Below are positions 37,601-46,600 of a DNA stretch of 64,000 nucleotides, piece by piece. This stretch comes from Diadema antillarum. Its lineage: Eukaryota. The number at the start of each line of letters is the position of its first letter. The first letter of the stretch is position 1. The notes beneath the pieces were generated by a model. The model did not search any database. It was not told the origin of the DNA and saw only the letters and a program-made list of their open reading frames with translations. Where the stretch lies: the NCBI RefSeq assembly GCF_040938485.1, contig NW_027271592.1, positions 434,001 through 498,000 on the forward strand. The letters are read 5' to 3'. A program made the position numbers and the translations under genes.

Positions 37601-40600
37601 TTTACCTTCTTTTGTTTTGTTTGCTTTTTGTCACAATGATGCAGTCTTATCCTGCGATATTTGTTCTTCAATCCAGGTTATATTTTCACTTTTACTTTGA
37701 TGATTGTAACGTGTAGGTATTTTTGCTGTAGATATTTGAGAAGAACCAAGAATTAGTTGGTTGTCCGATTCATTTAAGGAAAATGCGCACTTCTGAATCT
37801 GTTCTGGTGAAAAACCAAATTCCTTATATCACATTTAAAATCTACTTAATTCCTAGATATCTCCTGCTTATTATTGAATCAAAGAACTGAAAAATATCTA
37901 ATGTATTTTTGCTCATTCACTTGCTTGAAATCAGTCTTGCATATTGAACTCAACAAGAAGACAACCTCAATGTGTGCAAAGACTTATGAATGGTCTGAGC
38001 AAAGAGATAGAGAAGTCAGGCAAATTTGAAATTTTGTTTGTATTTTGTCCCTTCTGTGAATACTGTGCAGACATTATTTTTTCTTTCCATTTGTTCTCGA
38101 TTTTGCAGAACTTTCAAGTTGGCATGTACTCTTTGTACAGAATATATGAGCAGTGATCCATCAAATTAATCACATCAATCAAATTGCTAAAGTGCACTCC
38201 AATTGTAACGACACAGTTATAACAAAATTCTTGTTACAACAAAGTAAAATTTCAGGCCCTGAAAAATATCTATATATCCTTACGCGCTATACTGTTTGGC
38301 TATACCAATATTTTGATATCATGAAAGAAATCGACCATTCCCAAGAACTTTGTTGTAACAGAAGTGCACTGTATTGCAAAAACCGTGACTGTGAAATTTG
38401 TGTATCATTCATCTGTCCCATGTCCTCCTGACAAATTTGTTTCACACTTCACTTTTCAGATGGAAAGAAGTGTCAGACAAAGTCGCTGGTTGGCAGGGGA
38501 AGGCTTGGTGAGAAGAGTCCCAGGAGGGCACAGAATGGCTTCGTTCATACCAGACCACTAGCCTCTGACAAGATTGCCAGGACTCCCCTCAAGCATGTGG
38601 ATGGTCCCTTGAGAGAAATTGGAGATGCCATCGAGGTCTTGACAGAGGGACCTTGCAATGGGGCGGTGTCCAAAGAATCGGCATCCAGGACCAAAGGCAG
38701 CAGGCAGAACAGCACTACAAGAAGTCCGAAGACCACGATGAATGGTAGTCACAGGGGTGTGTCAACCAACCTTGGAGAGTCTGGGAGGAGGCCCAGGCGA
38801 TCGAGTGGTGTTAACTCAAAGTCTCCCAAGGGCAGGGGGAAGCAGTCCCCTAGTTTGAAGGGAAAGAGGAAGAAGATGGCAAAATTCTCAAAACGGGCCT
38901 CAACTCTTCAGATTACGATTCCTGTAGGAAAGGGAATGGGAGGAATTAAAAGTCCTCGAACCTTACAAAAGCAGGTAGACAAGCCATTCTTCACAGAAAA
39001 GATGGCCAGAAGTCCCCACAAAGAACTCACGGGCCCGCTAGAGAGATATGCCAATGCTATTGAGTACAATATAGCTCCCAGCTTTCAGTATGCCGAGGCA
39101 ATAAAACCCAAAAAGCGTCTACCTCTGGCAACAACTGCTTCATCAAGGACGGCCTCTATGGATGGTGGAAGGTCGTCACCCGAAAATGTGAAGAGAGATT
39201 TGTTTAGGCACAATTCAGTGAACCAAAGCTGTGATGTTCACGAGCAAAGTGATTCTCCGAGTATGGCGAGGTCAAGGAGGAACAGTGCCAGGTCAGTTGA
39301 AGATGGTGTCAGCAAACCCAGGAGACGAAGTAGTCAAAGGGATGAGAGCACTGCTTTGAAAGGCACAAATGTTTCGGATAGTCCAGGAAGACTTCGGAGG
39401 AGCAAGTCTCTGACGGCATCTGACGTATCACCACAAGGAGAGCCTTCAGCTTCAGACAAGTCCGTGAAGTTTGCAAGGCAGAGTTCATTATCAGCTGAAT
39501 CACCTGTAGCAAAGGCCTTGAGTGCAAGAAAACCATCTGATGATGACTTCAAGGTCATCCAATCTCCAGTGTCTTCAAGGAGAGGGTCAAAGTGTGGACA
39601 AGCAAATGTTAAGAAGAAACCAGCAACTGGAAAAGCTGCAAGGAAAATGTCGCAAGGTAAGAGATCGAGGAGAAGCTACTGCCAACATGAGGAGCAAAAG
39701 GAAGGAAGTGATCCCATGGAAAAACAGCTCAAAGCTCAAACCTCACCTCATTTTGCTGGCTGTGGCAGGAGTGGAAAGAAAAGCCCGAGGGGATCAGAAG
39801 CCAAAGATCGTGGAAAGCCGTTTGTGTCAGACAATATTATTCGCAGTCCTCACAAGCCCATGGAGGGACCCATAGCTGTTTACAATGATGCAATAGGATT
39901 TAAGATGGCCCCTAGATTTCAGTATGCAGAGTCTGTCAAACCAAAGCCCAAAGTGATCCTTTCTCCCATAGACATTTCAGCAATTGCATCAGTCAGCGTG
40001 TTGAAGAGCCCCAAGACCCGTGTAAGAAGTACGAGTACAGTTGCCAGCGGCTCAGCAGAGTCCAATACGTCCCCTGCCAAAGTTCCAGTGAGAAGAAGCT
40101 TGTCGGTGCCAAACAAAAATAATCCAAAACCCGGGAAAACCACAAGAGTCCGAACAAATACCAAGCGCTCATCTAAAGATTGCAAGTCAAGTCATGACCC
40201 TACTCTCATCATGGAGCAATCTTTTGTTTTCGATGCGGTTCCTCCTGCCAACTGTACACTGGGTAGAGGGCACATGGGCTCTAGGAGTCCAAAGGATTTG
40301 ACAAAGTCAGAGCCCATAAAGGACATACTGAGCTCATCAAAGTTGGCCAGGAGCCCTCTCAAAAATGTGCATATTCCTGATCACCAAGTTAGTCCTTGCC
40401 ATGACAAAGCAGCTGGGGAACTCTCAGAGTTCAAACACGGAAAGAAAAGAAGTGCCCAATCCCTAAGCAAGTCCAAAGCTCGCAAGAATATTCCTCAGTG
40501 GCTTGAAGCAGAATTCCCTGACAGAGCCAAAGTGAAAAGTGTTTCAACAAAGAGATCTAACAAAGTGGCAGGAGAGACTTCTGGTGGGACCAGGAATCAG

Positions 40601-43600
40601 AAAGAAGGAGTTGCACATGGGAGTGAGAAGGGGAGCAAGTCAAAAGTTAAACATGAGAAAGGGCTTGAAAAGAAAGGTAGGCAACAAGCACGAAGCAACG
40701 GAAAAACCAGCCAGAAGGATAAAGTGAGCAAAGCAGTCACAAACAAGAAGGGTAAGACTGAGGACAAAGTTGAGATTAAGCCCAAGAAAGGAAAAAAGCC
40801 ATCTCCTCTGCAGTTTGATCCTGTCTCAATGCCTTACGTGAAGCTCAATGCATCCAATCTGGTTAAGCTCAAGCTGTGCAAGGAGTTGAATCCTCAGCTT
40901 GTTCTCAGAAAGTTGTGTCTGGATGAAGAGAGCTGGGGTGAGGTCATCAGGAACGCCCTGTACCGAGACCTTGATCGGCAGGTGAAGAGGAAGCTCAGTG
41001 AGGAGAATGATCAGACGGATGCCAAGAGGGCACGCATGGATGACACACCCCCAGGATTAAGAGGAGTTCAGAGGGTGTCTCCACGAAAAGAACAACTTAA
41101 ATCTCGGATGGCGGCAAAAGAAGCCAAATACAAGGGGGCATTGCAGCCTTTCAGAAGATTTGATGTGCAACAGAAGAGGAGAACCAAAATTGTAGATGTG
41201 TTTGGTGGAGGTCCAGATAATAAAACTTGGAACTACGTTCCCCCAATTAAACCCCCTATCGAAGAAACAGCGCAGAATCCCATTATTGAAATCTGTGAGC
41301 CCGGCAAGGATGAGTCAAGAGATGTGATGTGGAGACTTGCCTGCTACTCCCCTCAACGTCCAGAACAGATAAGCTCTCCTCCAAGATGTTGGTCCCCACT
41401 TGGCAAAATTTCTGATGCAGAAGAGGAAGAGGTGGAGGAGGAACAGGAGCAGGAGGAGGATGACAAGAGGGAAGAAGAAGGCAAGCTAGCTGTTGAGACT
41501 ATTCCTGAAGAGGATATTGAAGAGGATATTGAAGAAGAGGTGAAGGGAGAGATAATGGAAGAAGTGGCCACTGATTCCACCAAGAAGGAGGAGACTGCTG
41601 CTCCTGGCCCTATTTCAGATAATGAAATGGACATCATTGAGAGAAATCTGGGACAAATATCAGACTTCAGCGTGTATGAGAAGATGCTCCAGGTGACCTC
41701 CGATGGCAAGGCCAACCAGCAAGAACCAAAGTCGAGACACGAAGAGTTCACGTTGGAGCACTTTCCCGAAGATGTCTCTGGGATCGATGACCACTTGCAT
41801 GGAAACTCAGATCTTGATGCAATATCCAATGAGTTTGCTAAACTGGATAAAACTGACCAGGTCCCTGGGAATCATGGCCACGTCATTGAGAGGTGTGGTA
41901 AGGAAAACCAGGAGCCGAACTTGCAAGGGCAGCTTAGGGAGCAGCCAAAGATTGCTCATGACTGGAGTCAAAGTGACACACACACCAGTGTGGACCTTCC
42001 TCCTCATCCTGTCCCTAGCAATGATGTACATCCACAGGGTCAGCACCAGCTCAATCACACAGGGATACCCCCAGTTCCTGGCAATGGTCCTCTTGTGGCG
42101 CAGAATGCTGTTCCTCAGGGGACATCTCACTCAAACACAAGTTCCCAGGTTGACAGTAATAGCTCACCTGGAATTGCTCCAGGACAGGGGAACCAGGCAT
42201 ACTTATCCGAGGTACAAATATCAAGATCTTCCTCATATGGCTCACACTCACAAGTCAAATCTCACTCTTACACAAATTCTCCAGAAGAAAGCAGCAACTC
42301 ACCCCAAATTACACCAGGGCAAAAGGCCCAGTCTTACTTCTCTGATGTGCAGATTTCAGCACCTTCCTCCTACAGCTCACACTCTCCTCAGTACCAGAGA
42401 ACAGACAGCAGCAACTCTGGCACATCTTCCAGCCAGTACCCTAGCCAGAGGCAAGATGCAGGATCTCAGGGAGCTCAGGAACCGACTTGTATACCAGAGA
42501 CAGATTCTGAGCACAGCAGTGACTGCAGTCCACCTCAGGTCCAGTACAGCATGAACCACTCAACACCACCTTACCAGAATGACCCTGTTAAAGAATCTGT
42601 CATGCCAACTGGAACCAGCAGGCAGAATGAGTCACTGTACTACCACAGCAATCTGCAGGCCAGCCAAAGCATGTATGAAATGTCTAATCATTCCTTCAAT
42701 CAGTCATCAGTCTATGGAGGGGAGAGACTAGTTGATCAGAGCCAAGGGTACAATCAGTCTGCCAACCATCTTCCGTATCCGTCCCCTGGAAGCAACCAGC
42801 GTCAGGGATATCCTCCCCCATACCCCTCCCCTCAACCCCCTTACCCCTCACCAAATCATCACCATCCTTCCACCCCGAATCAACACCACCCGCCAACTCC
42901 GAATCAGCACCACCCATCAACTCCAAATCAGCACCACCCATCCAACCATGAGCACCCTTCGCCATCTGGGCAGCCCCCCTACAGGGTGTCCTATCCACAG
43001 GCACCACACCCATACCCTGACAGTGGCACCACCGCCCCAGCAGCGAAACCAAAGATTTGGAGACCAGTTGCCATGCCTCCGACTGATTCCATGGTGCGGA
43101 GCAGTCTCCAGGAGTATGGCCTTCCAGAAGTTCACCATCAGTGTGCATACTGGGGAAATCCACAAGATCATGCAGGAAGGCAAAGGTATAACCAGGAAAA
43201 TGAGTTCCTAATATCATGTGCTATTAAAGGATAAAGTTTGAAGTGTTTGTTTAATATGTTGTACTTACACGAATTTTGCATGGAATTAGAAGTACTTCTA
43301 CAAGTATAATACTCGGTGTGTGTGATGTTCTCTGGGGTTGCAGCTAGGAAAACATGACTCTGTTCCCAGGCGTAGTCTCGGGGTTCAGAAATGAAATTCT
43401 CTTATATTGAAGTTTTATATAGCAGCTGCTTGATTCATACAATTAGGCCTTTATGTACATTTTTTTAATGTGTGTGTATATGTGGTTTTGTTTTGTTTGT
43501 TTTTTTGCAGGCATAGTCTGTTCTCAGTTTTCTGCAAAATGTCCTTTACGATAAGATATTCCAATCCAAAAGGATGCCAAGTCTCAAGAGAATATACTGT

Positions 43601-46600
43601 CGTATGTAATGTTCAGTACTCTCTGTGGCAACATCATACCTGTGGAGGAAAATAATGAAGAGCTTTCCTCTCTTTCACCTCAGGGAGGGACCCAGTCAAA
43701 CCCATGTGCAGAGCATGCTCCCGTCCACCTTGCAGCATGCAGAAACCCCTTGTGGCAACATGGGCCTGTCCCACTGGCAAACAGTTGTCCAGTCACAGGG
43801 GGATACTCCCACCTCTCAGGGTTATTCCACTGTGCACCAGGGGTACAACAGGGATGCTGTGTGGATGCCGTCCAGATATCCCCCTCCAAGGGATGCAGTG
43901 ACCAACTGGATGAATGAAAAGCAGCAGTGTGGGCAGAGGCACCACTTTGGTCATGAAGGGCCATCCTTGCCACAATACCAGCAACCTCAGCAACCTGATC
44001 AACACATTGTACAACCACCTCACCAGTCGCCAGGGCGGAGCATGCCACTTCTGCCATCTCATCACAATGGAAACTCACTGGGCGTTCCTACCAGCCCGTA
44101 TCCTGCTACTCCCAGCCAATCAAATACAAACAGTAATCTGAGGTATGCTGGGGAGAAAGGGATCTGTGGAACTGCCCAGGTAGGCAGAGCTGGTGGCAGC
44201 AATGCGCTGCAACCGCTGCCGCACAGTGACCAGCGGGTCTTGCAGTGCCAGCAGGAGTTGGCATCGCCAATTCAGCGTGTGCTAAATCCTGCCCACCAGC
44301 CCTCGTATCAAGTGCAGCAACATCCAGGGGACACTCCCAATCAGCAGTCCATCCCCGCAACTCAACAGCTGCAGCCACCTGCCCTCAAGGGTCCAGGGCA
44401 GGACAATAGCCAGGGCACTGCATCGCCTCATAGCAGTGATGCAAACAGTCACCCAACAGCAGGACAGGTGAATTGCACCGAGCCAACAGCTGCTATACAA
44501 TCTAACCCCAGCAGCAATCCCTCCACACCAACAACCGGACATCACTTAACCGCTCTGATGGCCGCTCCTCTTCAGGCAAGCGGGAGCACACCAAAGTCCA
44601 GCAGGCTGGCAGAGAGACCAGGGGATGGCAACACCCCTCCACTGTCGAGCACACCACTTCGTCCACTGACCAGTTTCCCACTGGCAGCCCCTCAGCCAGG
44701 CGTGACCCCAATAGCTTCGCAGAAACCTGGACCTTTTTCGGATGTGGCAAGACTGAAGAAAAATCCTAACCTTCCCAACACTCCAGCACAGGTAACAAAA
44801 AAAAAAAAATCTTCCCACTCCATGCTATAAAAGTCCAAAGATATTGGCGCAGCTCTAAAACTGAAATCCTGATCCTAAAGTGGTTGAATGTAATGTAAAT
44901 CTTCCACTGTGGGATGTGCTTTCCATTCCTTCTCTTTATTTTCCTGCACTCTGTGTCATTTTATTCTTTGACAGAATGAAATTGATTTGTGCATTCAAAA
45001 GAAAGTAGAAATATGTATTCCACCACTTCCTTACTCTGTTCATCATGGTTAAAGTTCTTTGAGTAAAGTGTCGTTGTAGGGCTTGTGGTGAAAGGTGCAG
45101 CAAAGTTCAGGGAATAGTATTCTTGGGAATGTTACAAACTCATCCTTCTAAAAACTGACAAATACATGCATCTTGTGTAGGCTCGTGTTTTCCTATATGA
45201 CTGTTCCAGCATTTGTTGTGATGCAAACATTTTGTTATTTTCTGTTTTCAGTGGGATAACATCACCTTGGGATGACTGTATTTTCACTTGTTAGTTGTTC
45301 TCTTTTGTACTTGCATTTCCTGGAATTATGTTGGTTTCAAAAAAGTAAGAATAAAAAAAAAACCAGCATAGATAAAGTCATATTGGGCTTATTTCAATGT
45401 AATATTTCTATTCAAAGAATTCAAAACATGTGCTTTATGTAAAATCTGAAAATTCCTATCTGTAGAAGATAGCAGGGAACCAAATTTTATGTCTGAATTG
45501 TCATCAGAAGTTACACAAATTCATTTTCCTGACTCCCATGTTTTCATCTCTCTCAGTCTTCACCCGTCACCCCTCTTCCGAAGAGGAAAGCACTCACCTC
45601 TCAGATCGAGGGCCCAACACCAAAGAACACGTACGGCTTCAAGGTCAGCCAGGGCAATGTCCAGGATGCAAAGGCCCTTCATGTGGTGAGTACAAGATGT
45701 CCAAGGTACAGTAGTCAGCACCATGGTAGCATTGCTTCAGTACACCAGCACTAGATGATATGTGTGGGACTGAGTGTGCTCTACCACATCTCCCTGAACA
45801 TGTCCATGTCTGACCATAATATTATGAAAATCACACTGATTTTATTTGATTTTAAAGTGATATGATGACCATGATCATCAGCGCTTCTCTTGTGTCTCAT
45901 TGATTAAAAAACAAAACAAAACGAGTATGATTGTGTGACTGACCTAAATTGTAGTTCAAGTTTGTATTAGGATTTGTCTCTTCCAAACAGTCTTGTTGTT
46001 ATTTAAATTGTCTTCTTGTAAAGGGAGTAACAACTTTTACCACCATGTGTTTCGTGCAGTCTTTGGGCTTTGTGGATACTCCAGTGGGGATTGATTTGTC
46101 AGTTGCAAGTTTTGTGACACTCTAGCTTTGGCTCTGAAATGCTTCAAAGGAATGCTACAGTGAAATGCATGCAATGATAAAAACATGCTTGTTCAGCATA
46201 CATTCCAATGATGAAGTGCCATGTTTATGTGTATTGTATTGCATGATTATCATTGCTGGTCTGTAACCTGTTGAGGACGAGTCCCAAGTATACTCGGGCA
46301 GGGGTCTATGGGAAATGTGTGTTGTAGCAAAATTAGCCTGTCCTCAACAGGTTCAGTAATATGGGATGAGTTGTATTGCAACAACATTTTATAGTAGCCA
46401 GCATCTGTTTTAACCTGGACTTGATTAAACACCAGGACCACACCCTTTTTGATCCCTAAATCTTCCATAAGGTACAACACGTGACCACTATGAGTCTCGA
46501 GATCCACACGCGCACCAGGAGGGACTACCACCCCGACCCTGACTTTGACCCCATCCGTGCCATCTTCTACTGCATCCACAAGGATGACCCCGGCGGTGGG

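What the first reader, a model, noticed from the sequence alone, without database searches (positions are those of the whole stretch)
38495..40375. Four-copy repeat module with paired CDK-type sites in the REV3L disordered region
Seen: the giant exon encodes a module G-x-[KR]-SP-[KR] ... ~17-20 aa ... [KN]-[IML]-[AI]-R-[ST]P-[HL]-K four times. Two copies are full 44-aa units with 23/44 identities by my count: KPFFTEKMARSPHKELTGPLERYANAIEYNIAPSFQYAEAIKPK (38981-39112) and KPFVSDNIIRSPHKPMEGPIAVYNDAIGFKMAPRFQYAESVKPK (39815-39946). Two are partial: RPLASDKIARTPLKHVDGPLREIGDAIE (38552-38635) and KLARSPLK (40340-40363). Known: [ST]-P-x-K is the full CDK consensus. Inference: aromatic and hydrophobic residues are retained while the surrounding linkers have diverged, suggesting a selected, phospho-switchable binding motif or mini-domain. 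I do not recall it from vertebrate REV3L, so it may be an undescribed, lineage-specific regulatory module of Pol zeta.
Basis: partly seen in the sequence, partly recalled or inferred. Interest (0 to 1): 0.72.

Follow-up and report, generated by a model that had tools for sequence, protein, structure and literature searches.

The report
Conserved four-copy motif in REV3L
The disordered middle of a sea-urchin-type DNA polymerase zeta (REV3L) carries four old copies of a 40-65-residue motif with two invariant Ser/Thr-Pro sites; a distant relative keeps them far better than the surrounding sequence, but their function is only inferred.

Summary
The 4.7-kb giant exon of a REV3L gene (38460-43185, + strand) encodes four copies of one composite motif, G-x-G-x-x-G-x-[KR]-S-P-[KR], then 8-10 residues, then [KR]-P-[FL]-x-[ST]-[DE]-K-[IM]-[AS]-R-[ST]-P-x-K..G-P-[LI]. 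R2 and R3 add an aromatic tail (AP-x-FQYAE-x-x-KPK).

- **More than chance:** R2 against R3 scores z = 26 over shuffles. A profile built from R2 and R3 alone finds R1 and R4 and nothing else in the window.
- **Old duplication:** synonymous sites between R2 and R3 are saturated.
- **Conserved:** the only relative I could retrieve (P0001, 47% identical overall) has the same four units in the same order. Units are 62% identical and linkers 32% (0 of 20000 permutations). All 8 unit Ser/Thr-Pro sites are kept, against 6 of 14 in linkers.
- **No known match:** Pfam, PDB and the ESM Atlas give nothing.
- **No fold:** AlphaFold predicts disorder with at most a weak helix, so this is a linear motif, not a mini-domain.

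Phosphorylation, the binding partner and absence from vertebrates could not be tested, because the protein databases returned no annotated animal REV3L. This is a new but unremarkable kind of feature, of moderate to low interest. In passing: a TASP1-type site (QLDGSSD) sits in the exon just upstream.

The parts
38460..43185 (+). Giant central exon of REV3L (4726 nt, about 1575 codons). Acceptor ttttcag|at at 38459/38460, donor CAAAG|GTATAA at 43185/43186. Reading frame 38462+3n.
   Evidence: Open frame; splice sites read. The orthologous ORF P0001 is open over the same span.
38489..38641 (+). Unit R1 (51 aa): VGRGRLGEKSPRR ... RPLASDKIARTPLK..GPL..IGDAIE. It has no aromatic tail and starts about 19 residues after the TASP1-like site.
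   Evidence: HMM from R2/R3 only finds it at i-E 9e-10. 51% identical to P0001 R1.
38924..39118 (+). Unit R2 (65 aa, full): VGKGMGGIKSPR ... KPFFTEKMARSPHK..GPLERY..AIEYNIAPSFQYAEAIKPKKR.
   Evidence: 65% identical to P0001 R2.
39758..39955 (+). Unit R3 (66 aa, full): GCGRSGKKSPR ... KPFVSDNIIRSPHK..GPIAVY..AIGFKMAPRFQYAESVKPKPKV, followed by a PxVxL-like PKVIL.
   Evidence: 70% identical to P0001 R3.
40259..40384 (+). Unit R4 (42 aa, truncated): LGRGHMGSRSPKDLTK ... SSKLARSPLKNV. The first 17 residues (TLGRGHMGSRSPKDLTK) are identical in P0001.
   Evidence: i-E 0.004 here, 2.7e-5 in P0001.

Best explanation
Shown: the N-terminal 640 residues of the giant exon of this REV3L are a strongly basic (net +74), Ser/Pro-rich, disordered segment. 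It contains four ancient copies of one composite linear motif. Each copy has a Gly-x-Gly-x-x-Gly-x-[KR]-Ser-Pro-[KR] element, then, 20-23 residues after the first Ser, an [AS]-Arg-[Ser/Thr]-Pro-x-Lys element followed by Gly-Pro-[Leu/Ile]. R1-R3 add a short amphipathic stretch, and R2 and R3 extend it with AP-x-FQYAE-x-x-KPK. The copies are kept by selection on the protein. Inferred: the units act as multivalent docking sites in a flexible tether. The hydrophobic/aromatic segment contacts a partner, folding only on binding. The two invariant proline-directed sites (CDK/MAPK-type consensus) set the charge next to it and so switch binding on or off with the cell cycle or with stress. If the upstream QLD|G site is cut by taspase as in mammals, R1 would lie at the very N-terminus of the polymerase-bearing fragment. 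The partner is unknown.
For: The repeat is far beyond chance. The duplication is old: only 8 of 23 third codon positions match at identical residues of R2/R3. R2 of the window is closer to R2 of P0001 (65%) than to its own R3 (47%). There are four units in the same order, with similar spacing, in P0001. Units are 62% and linkers 32% identical, 0/20000 permutations. Invariant in all 8 copies: G2 G4 G7 S10 P11 R29 P31 P38. S/T-P sites are kept 8/8 in units against 6/14 in linkers. [ST]P is enriched 22 vs 10.4 expected. Site 2 fits [ST]-P-x-K in 4/4 units here and 3/4 in P0001. The region is predicted disordered, with only a weak helix over residues 38-59 of the unit. Read depth is flat over the exon in two runs of a related species (organism B), so the unit is not a dispersed genomic repeat.
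Against: There is no direct evidence of phosphorylation, of any partner, or even of transcription: no RNA run was found. Conservation rests on a single orthologue of unknown species. The full CDK consensus holds at site 1 in only 1/4 units here. Seven of the eight acceptors here, and all eight in P0001, are Ser, so Cks1-type priming is unlikely. The invariant residues are mostly Gly/Pro/Ser/Arg, which fits a nucleic-acid-binding turn motif as well as a kinase site. The AlphaFold helix has low confidence (pLDDT about 60-70, alignment of 8).
Confidence: 0.45

Rival explanations
1. The units are DNA- or chromatin-binding elements of the SPKK / AT-hook-like kind. Gly-rich basic turns (GRG..G.KSPRR, ARSPxK) would lie in the minor groove and extend the 'positively charged domain' that helps Pol zeta hold DNA. 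In this reading Ser-Pro is structural first and regulatory second.
For: Net charge is +4 to +8 per unit and +74 over 660 residues. [KR][ST]P[KR] occurs 7 times against 0.41 expected. SPK(K/R) motifs are a known chromatin-binding device of echinoid sperm histones (PMC9903204). Human REV3L has a positively charged domain needed for efficient polymerase function (PMC4699697; PMC6895278). The invariant residues are Gly, Ser, Pro and Arg.
Against: Strict S-P-[KR]-[KR] holds at site 1 in only 1/4 units here and 2/4 in P0001. There is no G-R-P AT-hook core anywhere. The conserved aromatic/hydrophobic part (Y..AI.[YF]K.AP.FQYAE) and a conserved acidic position are not explained by groove binding.
Confidence: 0.25
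2. The units are phospho-regulated nuclear import signals: basic clusters (KSPRR, KPKKR, KPKPK) flanked by proline-directed sites, as in CDK-gated NLSs.
For: Basic clusters sit next to S-P sites in each unit. The protein is very large and nuclear.
Against: Four copies with conserved aromatic segments are far more than an NLS needs. R1 and R4 lack the KPK tail.
Confidence: 0.1
3. The unit is a small autonomously folded domain.
For: Conserved hydrophobic periodicity; a helix predicted for residues 38-59 of R2.
Against: Mean pLDDT is 60.4 and pTM 0.23 for the unit, and 39.4 for residues 1-660 with almost no secondary structure. R1 and R4 lack half of the unit. These are shallow alignments, so the test is weak.
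Confidence: 0.05
4. The units have no function of their own. They are either a relic of old internal duplications, or conserved because of a constraint on the RNA (for example signals that protect an ultra-long exon from cryptic splicing).
For: Ultra-long exons, REV3L's among them, need protection from cryptic splicing (PMC11446547, listed; abstract only, not read). Internal duplications are common in disordered regions.
Against: The units have twice the amino-acid identity of the linkers in the orthologue. The same residues are kept among paralogous copies whose synonymous sites are randomised. That points to selection on the peptide, not on the RNA.
Confidence: 0.07

Closest known systems
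Central insert of vertebrate REV3L (exon 14: disordered stretches, positively charged domain, DUF4683/NEXMIF homology, REV7-binding motif)
   Same: Same gene and the same position between the N-terminal and polymerase domains. A single giant exon (4.7 kb here, 4.2 kb in human) is preceded by a small exon with a QLDG taspase-type site. It ends with a hydrophobic-hydrophobic-x-P-x-x-x-P-P motif like the REV7-binding site. It is basic and predicted disordered.
   Different: No Pfam DUF4683 match even at E<=10. The four-copy unit is not described in the REV3L papers I consulted (keyword look-ups in three). I could not obtain a vertebrate sequence to check directly.
SPKK / SPK(K/R) minor-groove motifs of echinoid and hydrozoan sperm histones
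   Same: Ser-Pro followed by basic residues, repeated, in a basic disordered context. In histones, phosphorylation of the Ser weakens DNA binding (my own knowledge; the motif itself is in PMC9903204).
   Different: Here the S-P sites are embedded in a much longer conserved unit with Gly-x-Gly-x-x-Gly and aromatic segments. The strict SP[KR][KR] form is present in a minority of copies. The copies lie 90-210 residues apart, not in tandem.
Multisite CDK-substrate clusters in disordered regions (for example Sic1, Cdc6, Rb linker)
   Same: Enrichment of [ST]-P and [ST]-P-x-[KR] in a disordered basic region, with site conservation above background.
   Different: Such clusters usually conserve site number rather than flanking sequence. 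Here about 40-65 residues around a pair of sites are conserved as a unit and repeated four times. No canonical RxL or Cks1 (pThr) docking feature was found.

Membership tests
REV3L / DNA polymerase zeta catalytic subunit (identity of the gene) | B-family polymerase motifs closer to Rev3 than to Pol delta or Pol alpha | tested here: met
   The exon at 52080-52349 matches yeast Rev3 at 7.5e-27 (96 bits) and Pol delta at 1.7e-8. The DxxSLYPS, YGDTD and KRY motifs can be read in the exon ORFs.
REV3L / DNA polymerase zeta catalytic subunit (identity of the gene) | REV7-binding motif, consensus hydrophobic-hydrophobic-x-P-x-x-x-x-P-S-R | tested here: inconclusive
   KIWRPVAMPPTDS at 43052 fits the hydrophobic-hydrophobic-x-P-x-x-x-P-P part but has TD in place of SR. 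It is conserved in P0001. Binding was not tested.
Pfam DUF4683 (REV3L / NEXMIF / AHDC1 homology region) | Match to the Pfam model | tested here: not met
   0 families at E<=1 for the exon and at E<=10 for residues about 772-989 and for P0001.
CDK (proline-directed kinase) substrate site | [ST]-P-x-[KR] full consensus, in an accessible disordered region | tested here: met
   Site 2 fits in 4/4 units here and 3/4 in P0001; site 1 fits in 1/4 and 2/4. The region is disordered by AlphaFold. This is a sequence consensus only.
CDK (proline-directed kinase) substrate site | The site is actually phosphorylated by a CDK | not testable with these tools
   No phosphoproteome covering this protein was found.
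Cks1-dependent multisite CDK priming | Priming phospho-Thr-Pro with a hydrophobic or Pro residue at -2 | tested here: not met
   15 of the 16 acceptor residues in the two species are Ser. The single Thr (R1, IARTP) has Ala at -2.
SPKK minor-groove motif | S-P-[KR]-[KR], usually in close tandem copies | tested here: inconclusive
   Site 1 reads SPRR, SPRT, SPRG, SPKD here and SPKK, SPKA, SPRR, SPKD in P0001. The copies are not tandem.
AT-hook | G-R-P core flanked by basic residues | tested here: not met
   The units read GRGRLG, GKGMGG, GCGRSG and GRGHMG; none has a G-R-P core.
Autonomously folded protein domain | Confident predicted or solved fold | tested here: not met
   pLDDT 60.4 and pTM 0.23 for the unit; 39.4 for residues 1-660. 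No PDB sequence match. The alignments were shallow.
HP1 chromoshadow-binding PxVxL motif | P-x-V-x-[LMV] conserved in orthologues | tested here: inconclusive
   PKVIL directly follows R3 here and is PKVVI in P0001. It is found in one unit only and is short enough to arise by chance.

The most novel reading that the evidence does not exclude
The four units are a cell-cycle-gated, multivalent docking platform of Pol zeta that predates vertebrates. They would belong to an ancestral deuterostome architecture: taspase site, then giant disordered exon, then REV7 motif. That would mean the 'vertebrate-specific' insert of REV3L and its proteolytic maturation are much older than currently written. R1 would then form the new N-terminus of the catalytic fragment after cleavage.
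Probability: 0.2. Interest if true: 0.55.

Novelty: new member of a known kind. Interest (0 to 1): 0.35.

Why it matters
The large insert of REV3L is mostly treated as dispensable disorder, and recombinant human Pol zeta constructs delete much of it. A motif that has been kept four times over, in two distant species, marks residues that selection cares about. It gives a concrete handle (eight Ser/Thr-Pro sites, one aromatic segment) for asking how Pol zeta is tied to the cell cycle, to chromatin or to partners. In itself this is an ordinary class of feature: a conserved linear-motif cluster in a disordered region, in a non-model animal, with no functional data. The side observation may interest the field more. 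A giant exon and a QLDG taspase-type site exist in a non-vertebrate REV3L, whereas a 2026 paper calls both vertebrate innovations.

Tried and rejected
1. Known domain: Pfam on the whole exon, on each unit, on P0001 and on the conserved 772-989 region gave nothing even at E<=10. PDB sequences gave nothing. ESM Atlas features gave no usable hit.
2. Relatives:
   - The exhaustive HMMER scan of 1.84 billion representatives returned one protein, P0001.
   - Word searches on residues 1-660 and 775-980 returned the same one.
   - A word search on R3 alone failed even to return P0001, a failed positive control, so that blank means nothing.
   - Full-length animal REV3L (over about 2800 aa) lies outside the length range that the word search allows for this query.
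   - No echinoderm or vertebrate proteome entry appeared in any search, so I draw no conclusion about absence elsewhere.
3. Two metagenome scans (alignments A3 and A5) found no relative.
4. P0001's contig could not be fetched as DNA, so no codon-level dN/dS was possible.
5. Reads: contigs of a related species (organism B) cover the whole exon at about 94% DNA identity. The table of differences was cut after the first 40 places, all upstream of the units, so no unit-versus-linker comparison could be made. No run was RNA. One small contig of run X11 crosses the intron/exon border at 37370, so X11 looks genomic.
6. Mini-domain: rejected on the AlphaFold results. I did not run a fold search because the models are too poor for it to mean anything.
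7. Motif look-alikes considered by eye and not adopted: PIP box and REV1-interacting FF motif (FF in R2 only), cyclin RxL, PP2A-B56 LxxIxE (ends in D, not E), PP1 RVxF, 14-3-3.

Full report
**What is there.** The window holds a complete REV3L gene on the + strand.
- The first coding exon lies near 21.75 kb and begins MFSVRVVTVNHY.
- B-family polymerase exons lie between about 46 and 62 kb. One of them matches yeast Rev3 at 7.5e-27 but Pol delta only at 1.7e-8.
- A CxxC...CxxC exon lies near 60.4 kb.
- The finding lies in the giant central exon, 38460-43185. Its acceptor is ttttcag|at and its donor CAAAG|GTATAA.

**Check of the observation.** Aligning the four copies with the four of an orthologue gives this pattern:
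- [VL]-G-x-G-[RHM]-x-G-x-[KR]-S-P-[KR], then 8-10 residues;
- then [KR]-P-[FL]-x-[ST]-[DE]-K-[IM]-[AS]-R-[ST]-P-x-K-x-hydrophobic-x-G-P-[LI]-x-x-[YI]-x-x-A-I;
- in R2 and R3 only, also [EG]-[YF]-[KN]-[IML]-A-P-x-F-Q-Y-A-E-[AS]-[VIL]-K-P-K.

Eight columns are invariant in all eight copies: G2, G4, G7, S10, P11, R29, P31 and P38. The two Ser/Thr-Pro sites are 20-23 residues apart. Unit coordinates are R1 38489-38641, R2 38924-39118, R3 39758-39955 and R4 40259-40384.

**Is it more than chance?** Yes.
- R2 against R3 scores 139 against 22.6+-4.4 for shuffles. R1 against R2 or R3 gives z 10-12, and R1 against R4 z 7.8.
- R4 is not significant against R2 or R3 pairwise. But a profile built only from R2 and R3 of the two species finds R1 (9e-10) and R4 (0.004 here, 2.7e-5 in the orthologue). 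It finds nothing else in any frame of the 64-kb window.
- G.G..G.[KR]SP[KR] occurs four times where shuffles give 0.00. G.G..G occurs only at these four places.

**Age.** At the 23 identical residues of R2 and R3, only 8 third codon positions agree, and DNA identity is 60%. The copies are therefore old and are not homogenised by conversion. Read depth of a related species is flat across the exon, so the unit is not a dispersed genomic repeat.

**Conservation.** The only relative I could retrieve is P0001. It is a 1460-residue ORF on a 19.6-kb contig of an ENA metagenome assembly, with a DNA_pol_B ORF further along the same contig. It is the orthologous giant exon of another animal.
- It is 47% identical over the first 989 residues.
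- It has the same four units in the same order, with similar spacing: linkers of 90/207/135 residues against 94/213/101 here.
- Each unit is closest to its positional counterpart. So all the duplications predate the split of the two species.
- Units are 62% identical and the linkers between them 32%. None of 20000 random placements of four segments of the same lengths reached 62% (maximum 58%). That level equals the best-conserved part of the exon (residues 775-980, 61%).
- All 8 unit Ser/Thr-Pro sites are retained, against 6 of 14 in the linkers.

The caveat is that this rests on one orthologue of unknown species.

**Known domain?** No. Pfam gives nothing for the exon, the single units or P0001, even at E<=10. 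PDB sequences give nothing, and the ESM Atlas gives nothing usable. The first refutation criterion is not met either.

**Fold.** AlphaFold2 on R2 with the eight-copy alignment gives mean pLDDT 60 and pTM 0.23. It shows a helix over residues 38-59 (from the G-P to the FQYAE) and a turn at 25-28. On residues 1-660 with the orthologue it gives mean pLDDT 39 and essentially no secondary structure. The alignments are shallow. As far as the test goes, the unit is a linear motif with perhaps a conditionally formed amphipathic helix, not a mini-domain.

**How it probably works.** This part is inferred. The segment is very basic (net +74 in 660 residues) and enriched in [ST]P (22 against 10.4 expected) and in [KR][ST]P[KR] (7 against 0.41). 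Site 2 fits the full CDK consensus [ST]-P-x-K in 4/4 units here and 3/4 in P0001. Site 1 fits in only 1/4 and 2/4.
- **Best reading (about 0.45):** a multivalent docking motif. Its hydrophobic/aromatic part binds a partner, and its two invariant proline-directed sites gate that binding.
- **Main rival (about 0.25):** the units are SPKK-like, Gly-rich basic turns that bind DNA or chromatin and extend the positively charged region. SPK(K/R) motifs are a known device of echinoid sperm histones (PMC9903204). But the strict motif is present in a minority of copies, and the aromatic part is left unexplained.
- **Less likely:** phospho-regulated import signals, a small folded domain, and a functionless relic or RNA-level constraint.

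AT-hook (no G-R-P core) and Cks1 priming (15 of 16 acceptors are Ser) fail their defining features.

**What could not be done.** I could not compare with vertebrate REV3L, NEXMIF or AHDC1.
- The exhaustive representative search and two word searches returned only P0001. No echinoderm or vertebrate proteome entry appeared.
- The word search on R3 alone did not even recover P0001.
- Full-length REV3L proteins exceed the length range allowed for my query.
- Two metagenome scans were blank.

These blanks say nothing about absence, so 'lineage-specific' remains untested. No RNA run was found, so transcription and the splice sites are inferred from sequence and from the conserved open frame. Keyword look-ups in three REV3L papers (PMC4699697, PMC6895278, PMC13408197) turned up the positively charged domain, DUF4683/NEXMIF homology, REV7 sites and a taspase site, but no such repeat. 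A search for REV3L together with sea urchin found nothing relevant.

**Organism.** Another note of this scan on the same genome calls it a sea urchin. I did not verify this. Runs labelled 'organism B' hold the exon at about 94% DNA identity.

**Side observation.** The small exon 37370-37486 directly upstream of the giant exon encodes ...EEEDYLPQLDGSSDVPPKE. QLDGSSD closely resembles the validated human taspase-1 site QLDGTAD, which in mouse lies in exon 13, just before the giant exon 14 (PMC13408197). That paper describes both the giant exon and the site as vertebrate acquisitions. This window suggests the arrangement is older. R1 begins about 19 residues after the putative cut.

**Verdict.** This is a real, ancient, selectively maintained four-copy linear motif in the disordered insert of a non-vertebrate REV3L. 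It is not in Pfam or PDB, and its function is unproven. It is a new member of a common kind of feature. Interest is moderate to low (0.35).

Noticed in passing
window 37370-37486 (+): The small exon directly upstream of the giant exon encodes ...EEEDYLPQLDGSSDVPPKE. QLDGSSD resembles the validated human REV3L taspase-1 site QLDGTAD, which in mouse also lies in the exon before the giant exon (PMC13408197). That paper calls the site and the giant exon vertebrate-specific, and this non-vertebrate gene has both. The exon appears to end in a GC donor (GAAG|GCAAGT) that joins in frame to 38460.
   Followed up: partly
window 43052-43090 (+): The end of the giant exon reads KIWRPVAMPPTDS, a hydrophobic-hydrophobic-x-P-x-x-x-P-P pattern like the first REV7-binding motif of mammalian REV3L. 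It is identical in P0001. It has TD where the mammalian consensus has SR.
   Followed up: partly
window 40775-41400 (+), exon residues about 775-980: This is the best-conserved block of the exon (61% identity to P0001; QLVLRKLCLDE, FGGGPDNKTWNYVPP, CYSPQRP...SPPRCWSP). It sits after a Lys-rich stretch, where vertebrate REV3L has the PCD/DUF4683 region, yet it gives no Pfam DUF4683 hit even at E<=10.
   Followed up: partly
window 43625-44830 (+): A 401-codon open frame rich in Pro, Gln and Ser lies 440 bases downstream of the giant exon's donor. It contains PLRPLTSFP, a possible second REV7-type motif. I did not determine whether it is a further coding exon of REV3L.
   Followed up: no
window 38188-38260 (intron just upstream of the giant exon): A short interspersed repeat. 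Summed contig depth rises to 8,000-15,000 in two runs of organism B and is also raised in organisms A and C, with hundreds of loose ends. It is probably a SINE- or MITE-like element shared by related species.
   Followed up: no
window 42872-42943 (+): Three tandem copies of an 8-residue unit (STPNQHHP / PTPNQHHP) lie within a Pro/His/Gln-rich low-complexity tail of the giant exon.
   Followed up: no
window 41300-41520 (+): In the acidic Glu/Asp tract of the exon, organism B has an in-frame 12-base deletion at 41506. Many unrelated GAG-rich contigs pile up here.
   Followed up: no
tool behaviour: The word search restricted to unit R3 (residues 433-498) did not return P0001, although P0001 shares several exact 5-residue words with it (FQYAE, KPFVS, GPIAV, VKPKP). 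Blanks from that tool on short regions should not be read as absence.
   Followed up: no
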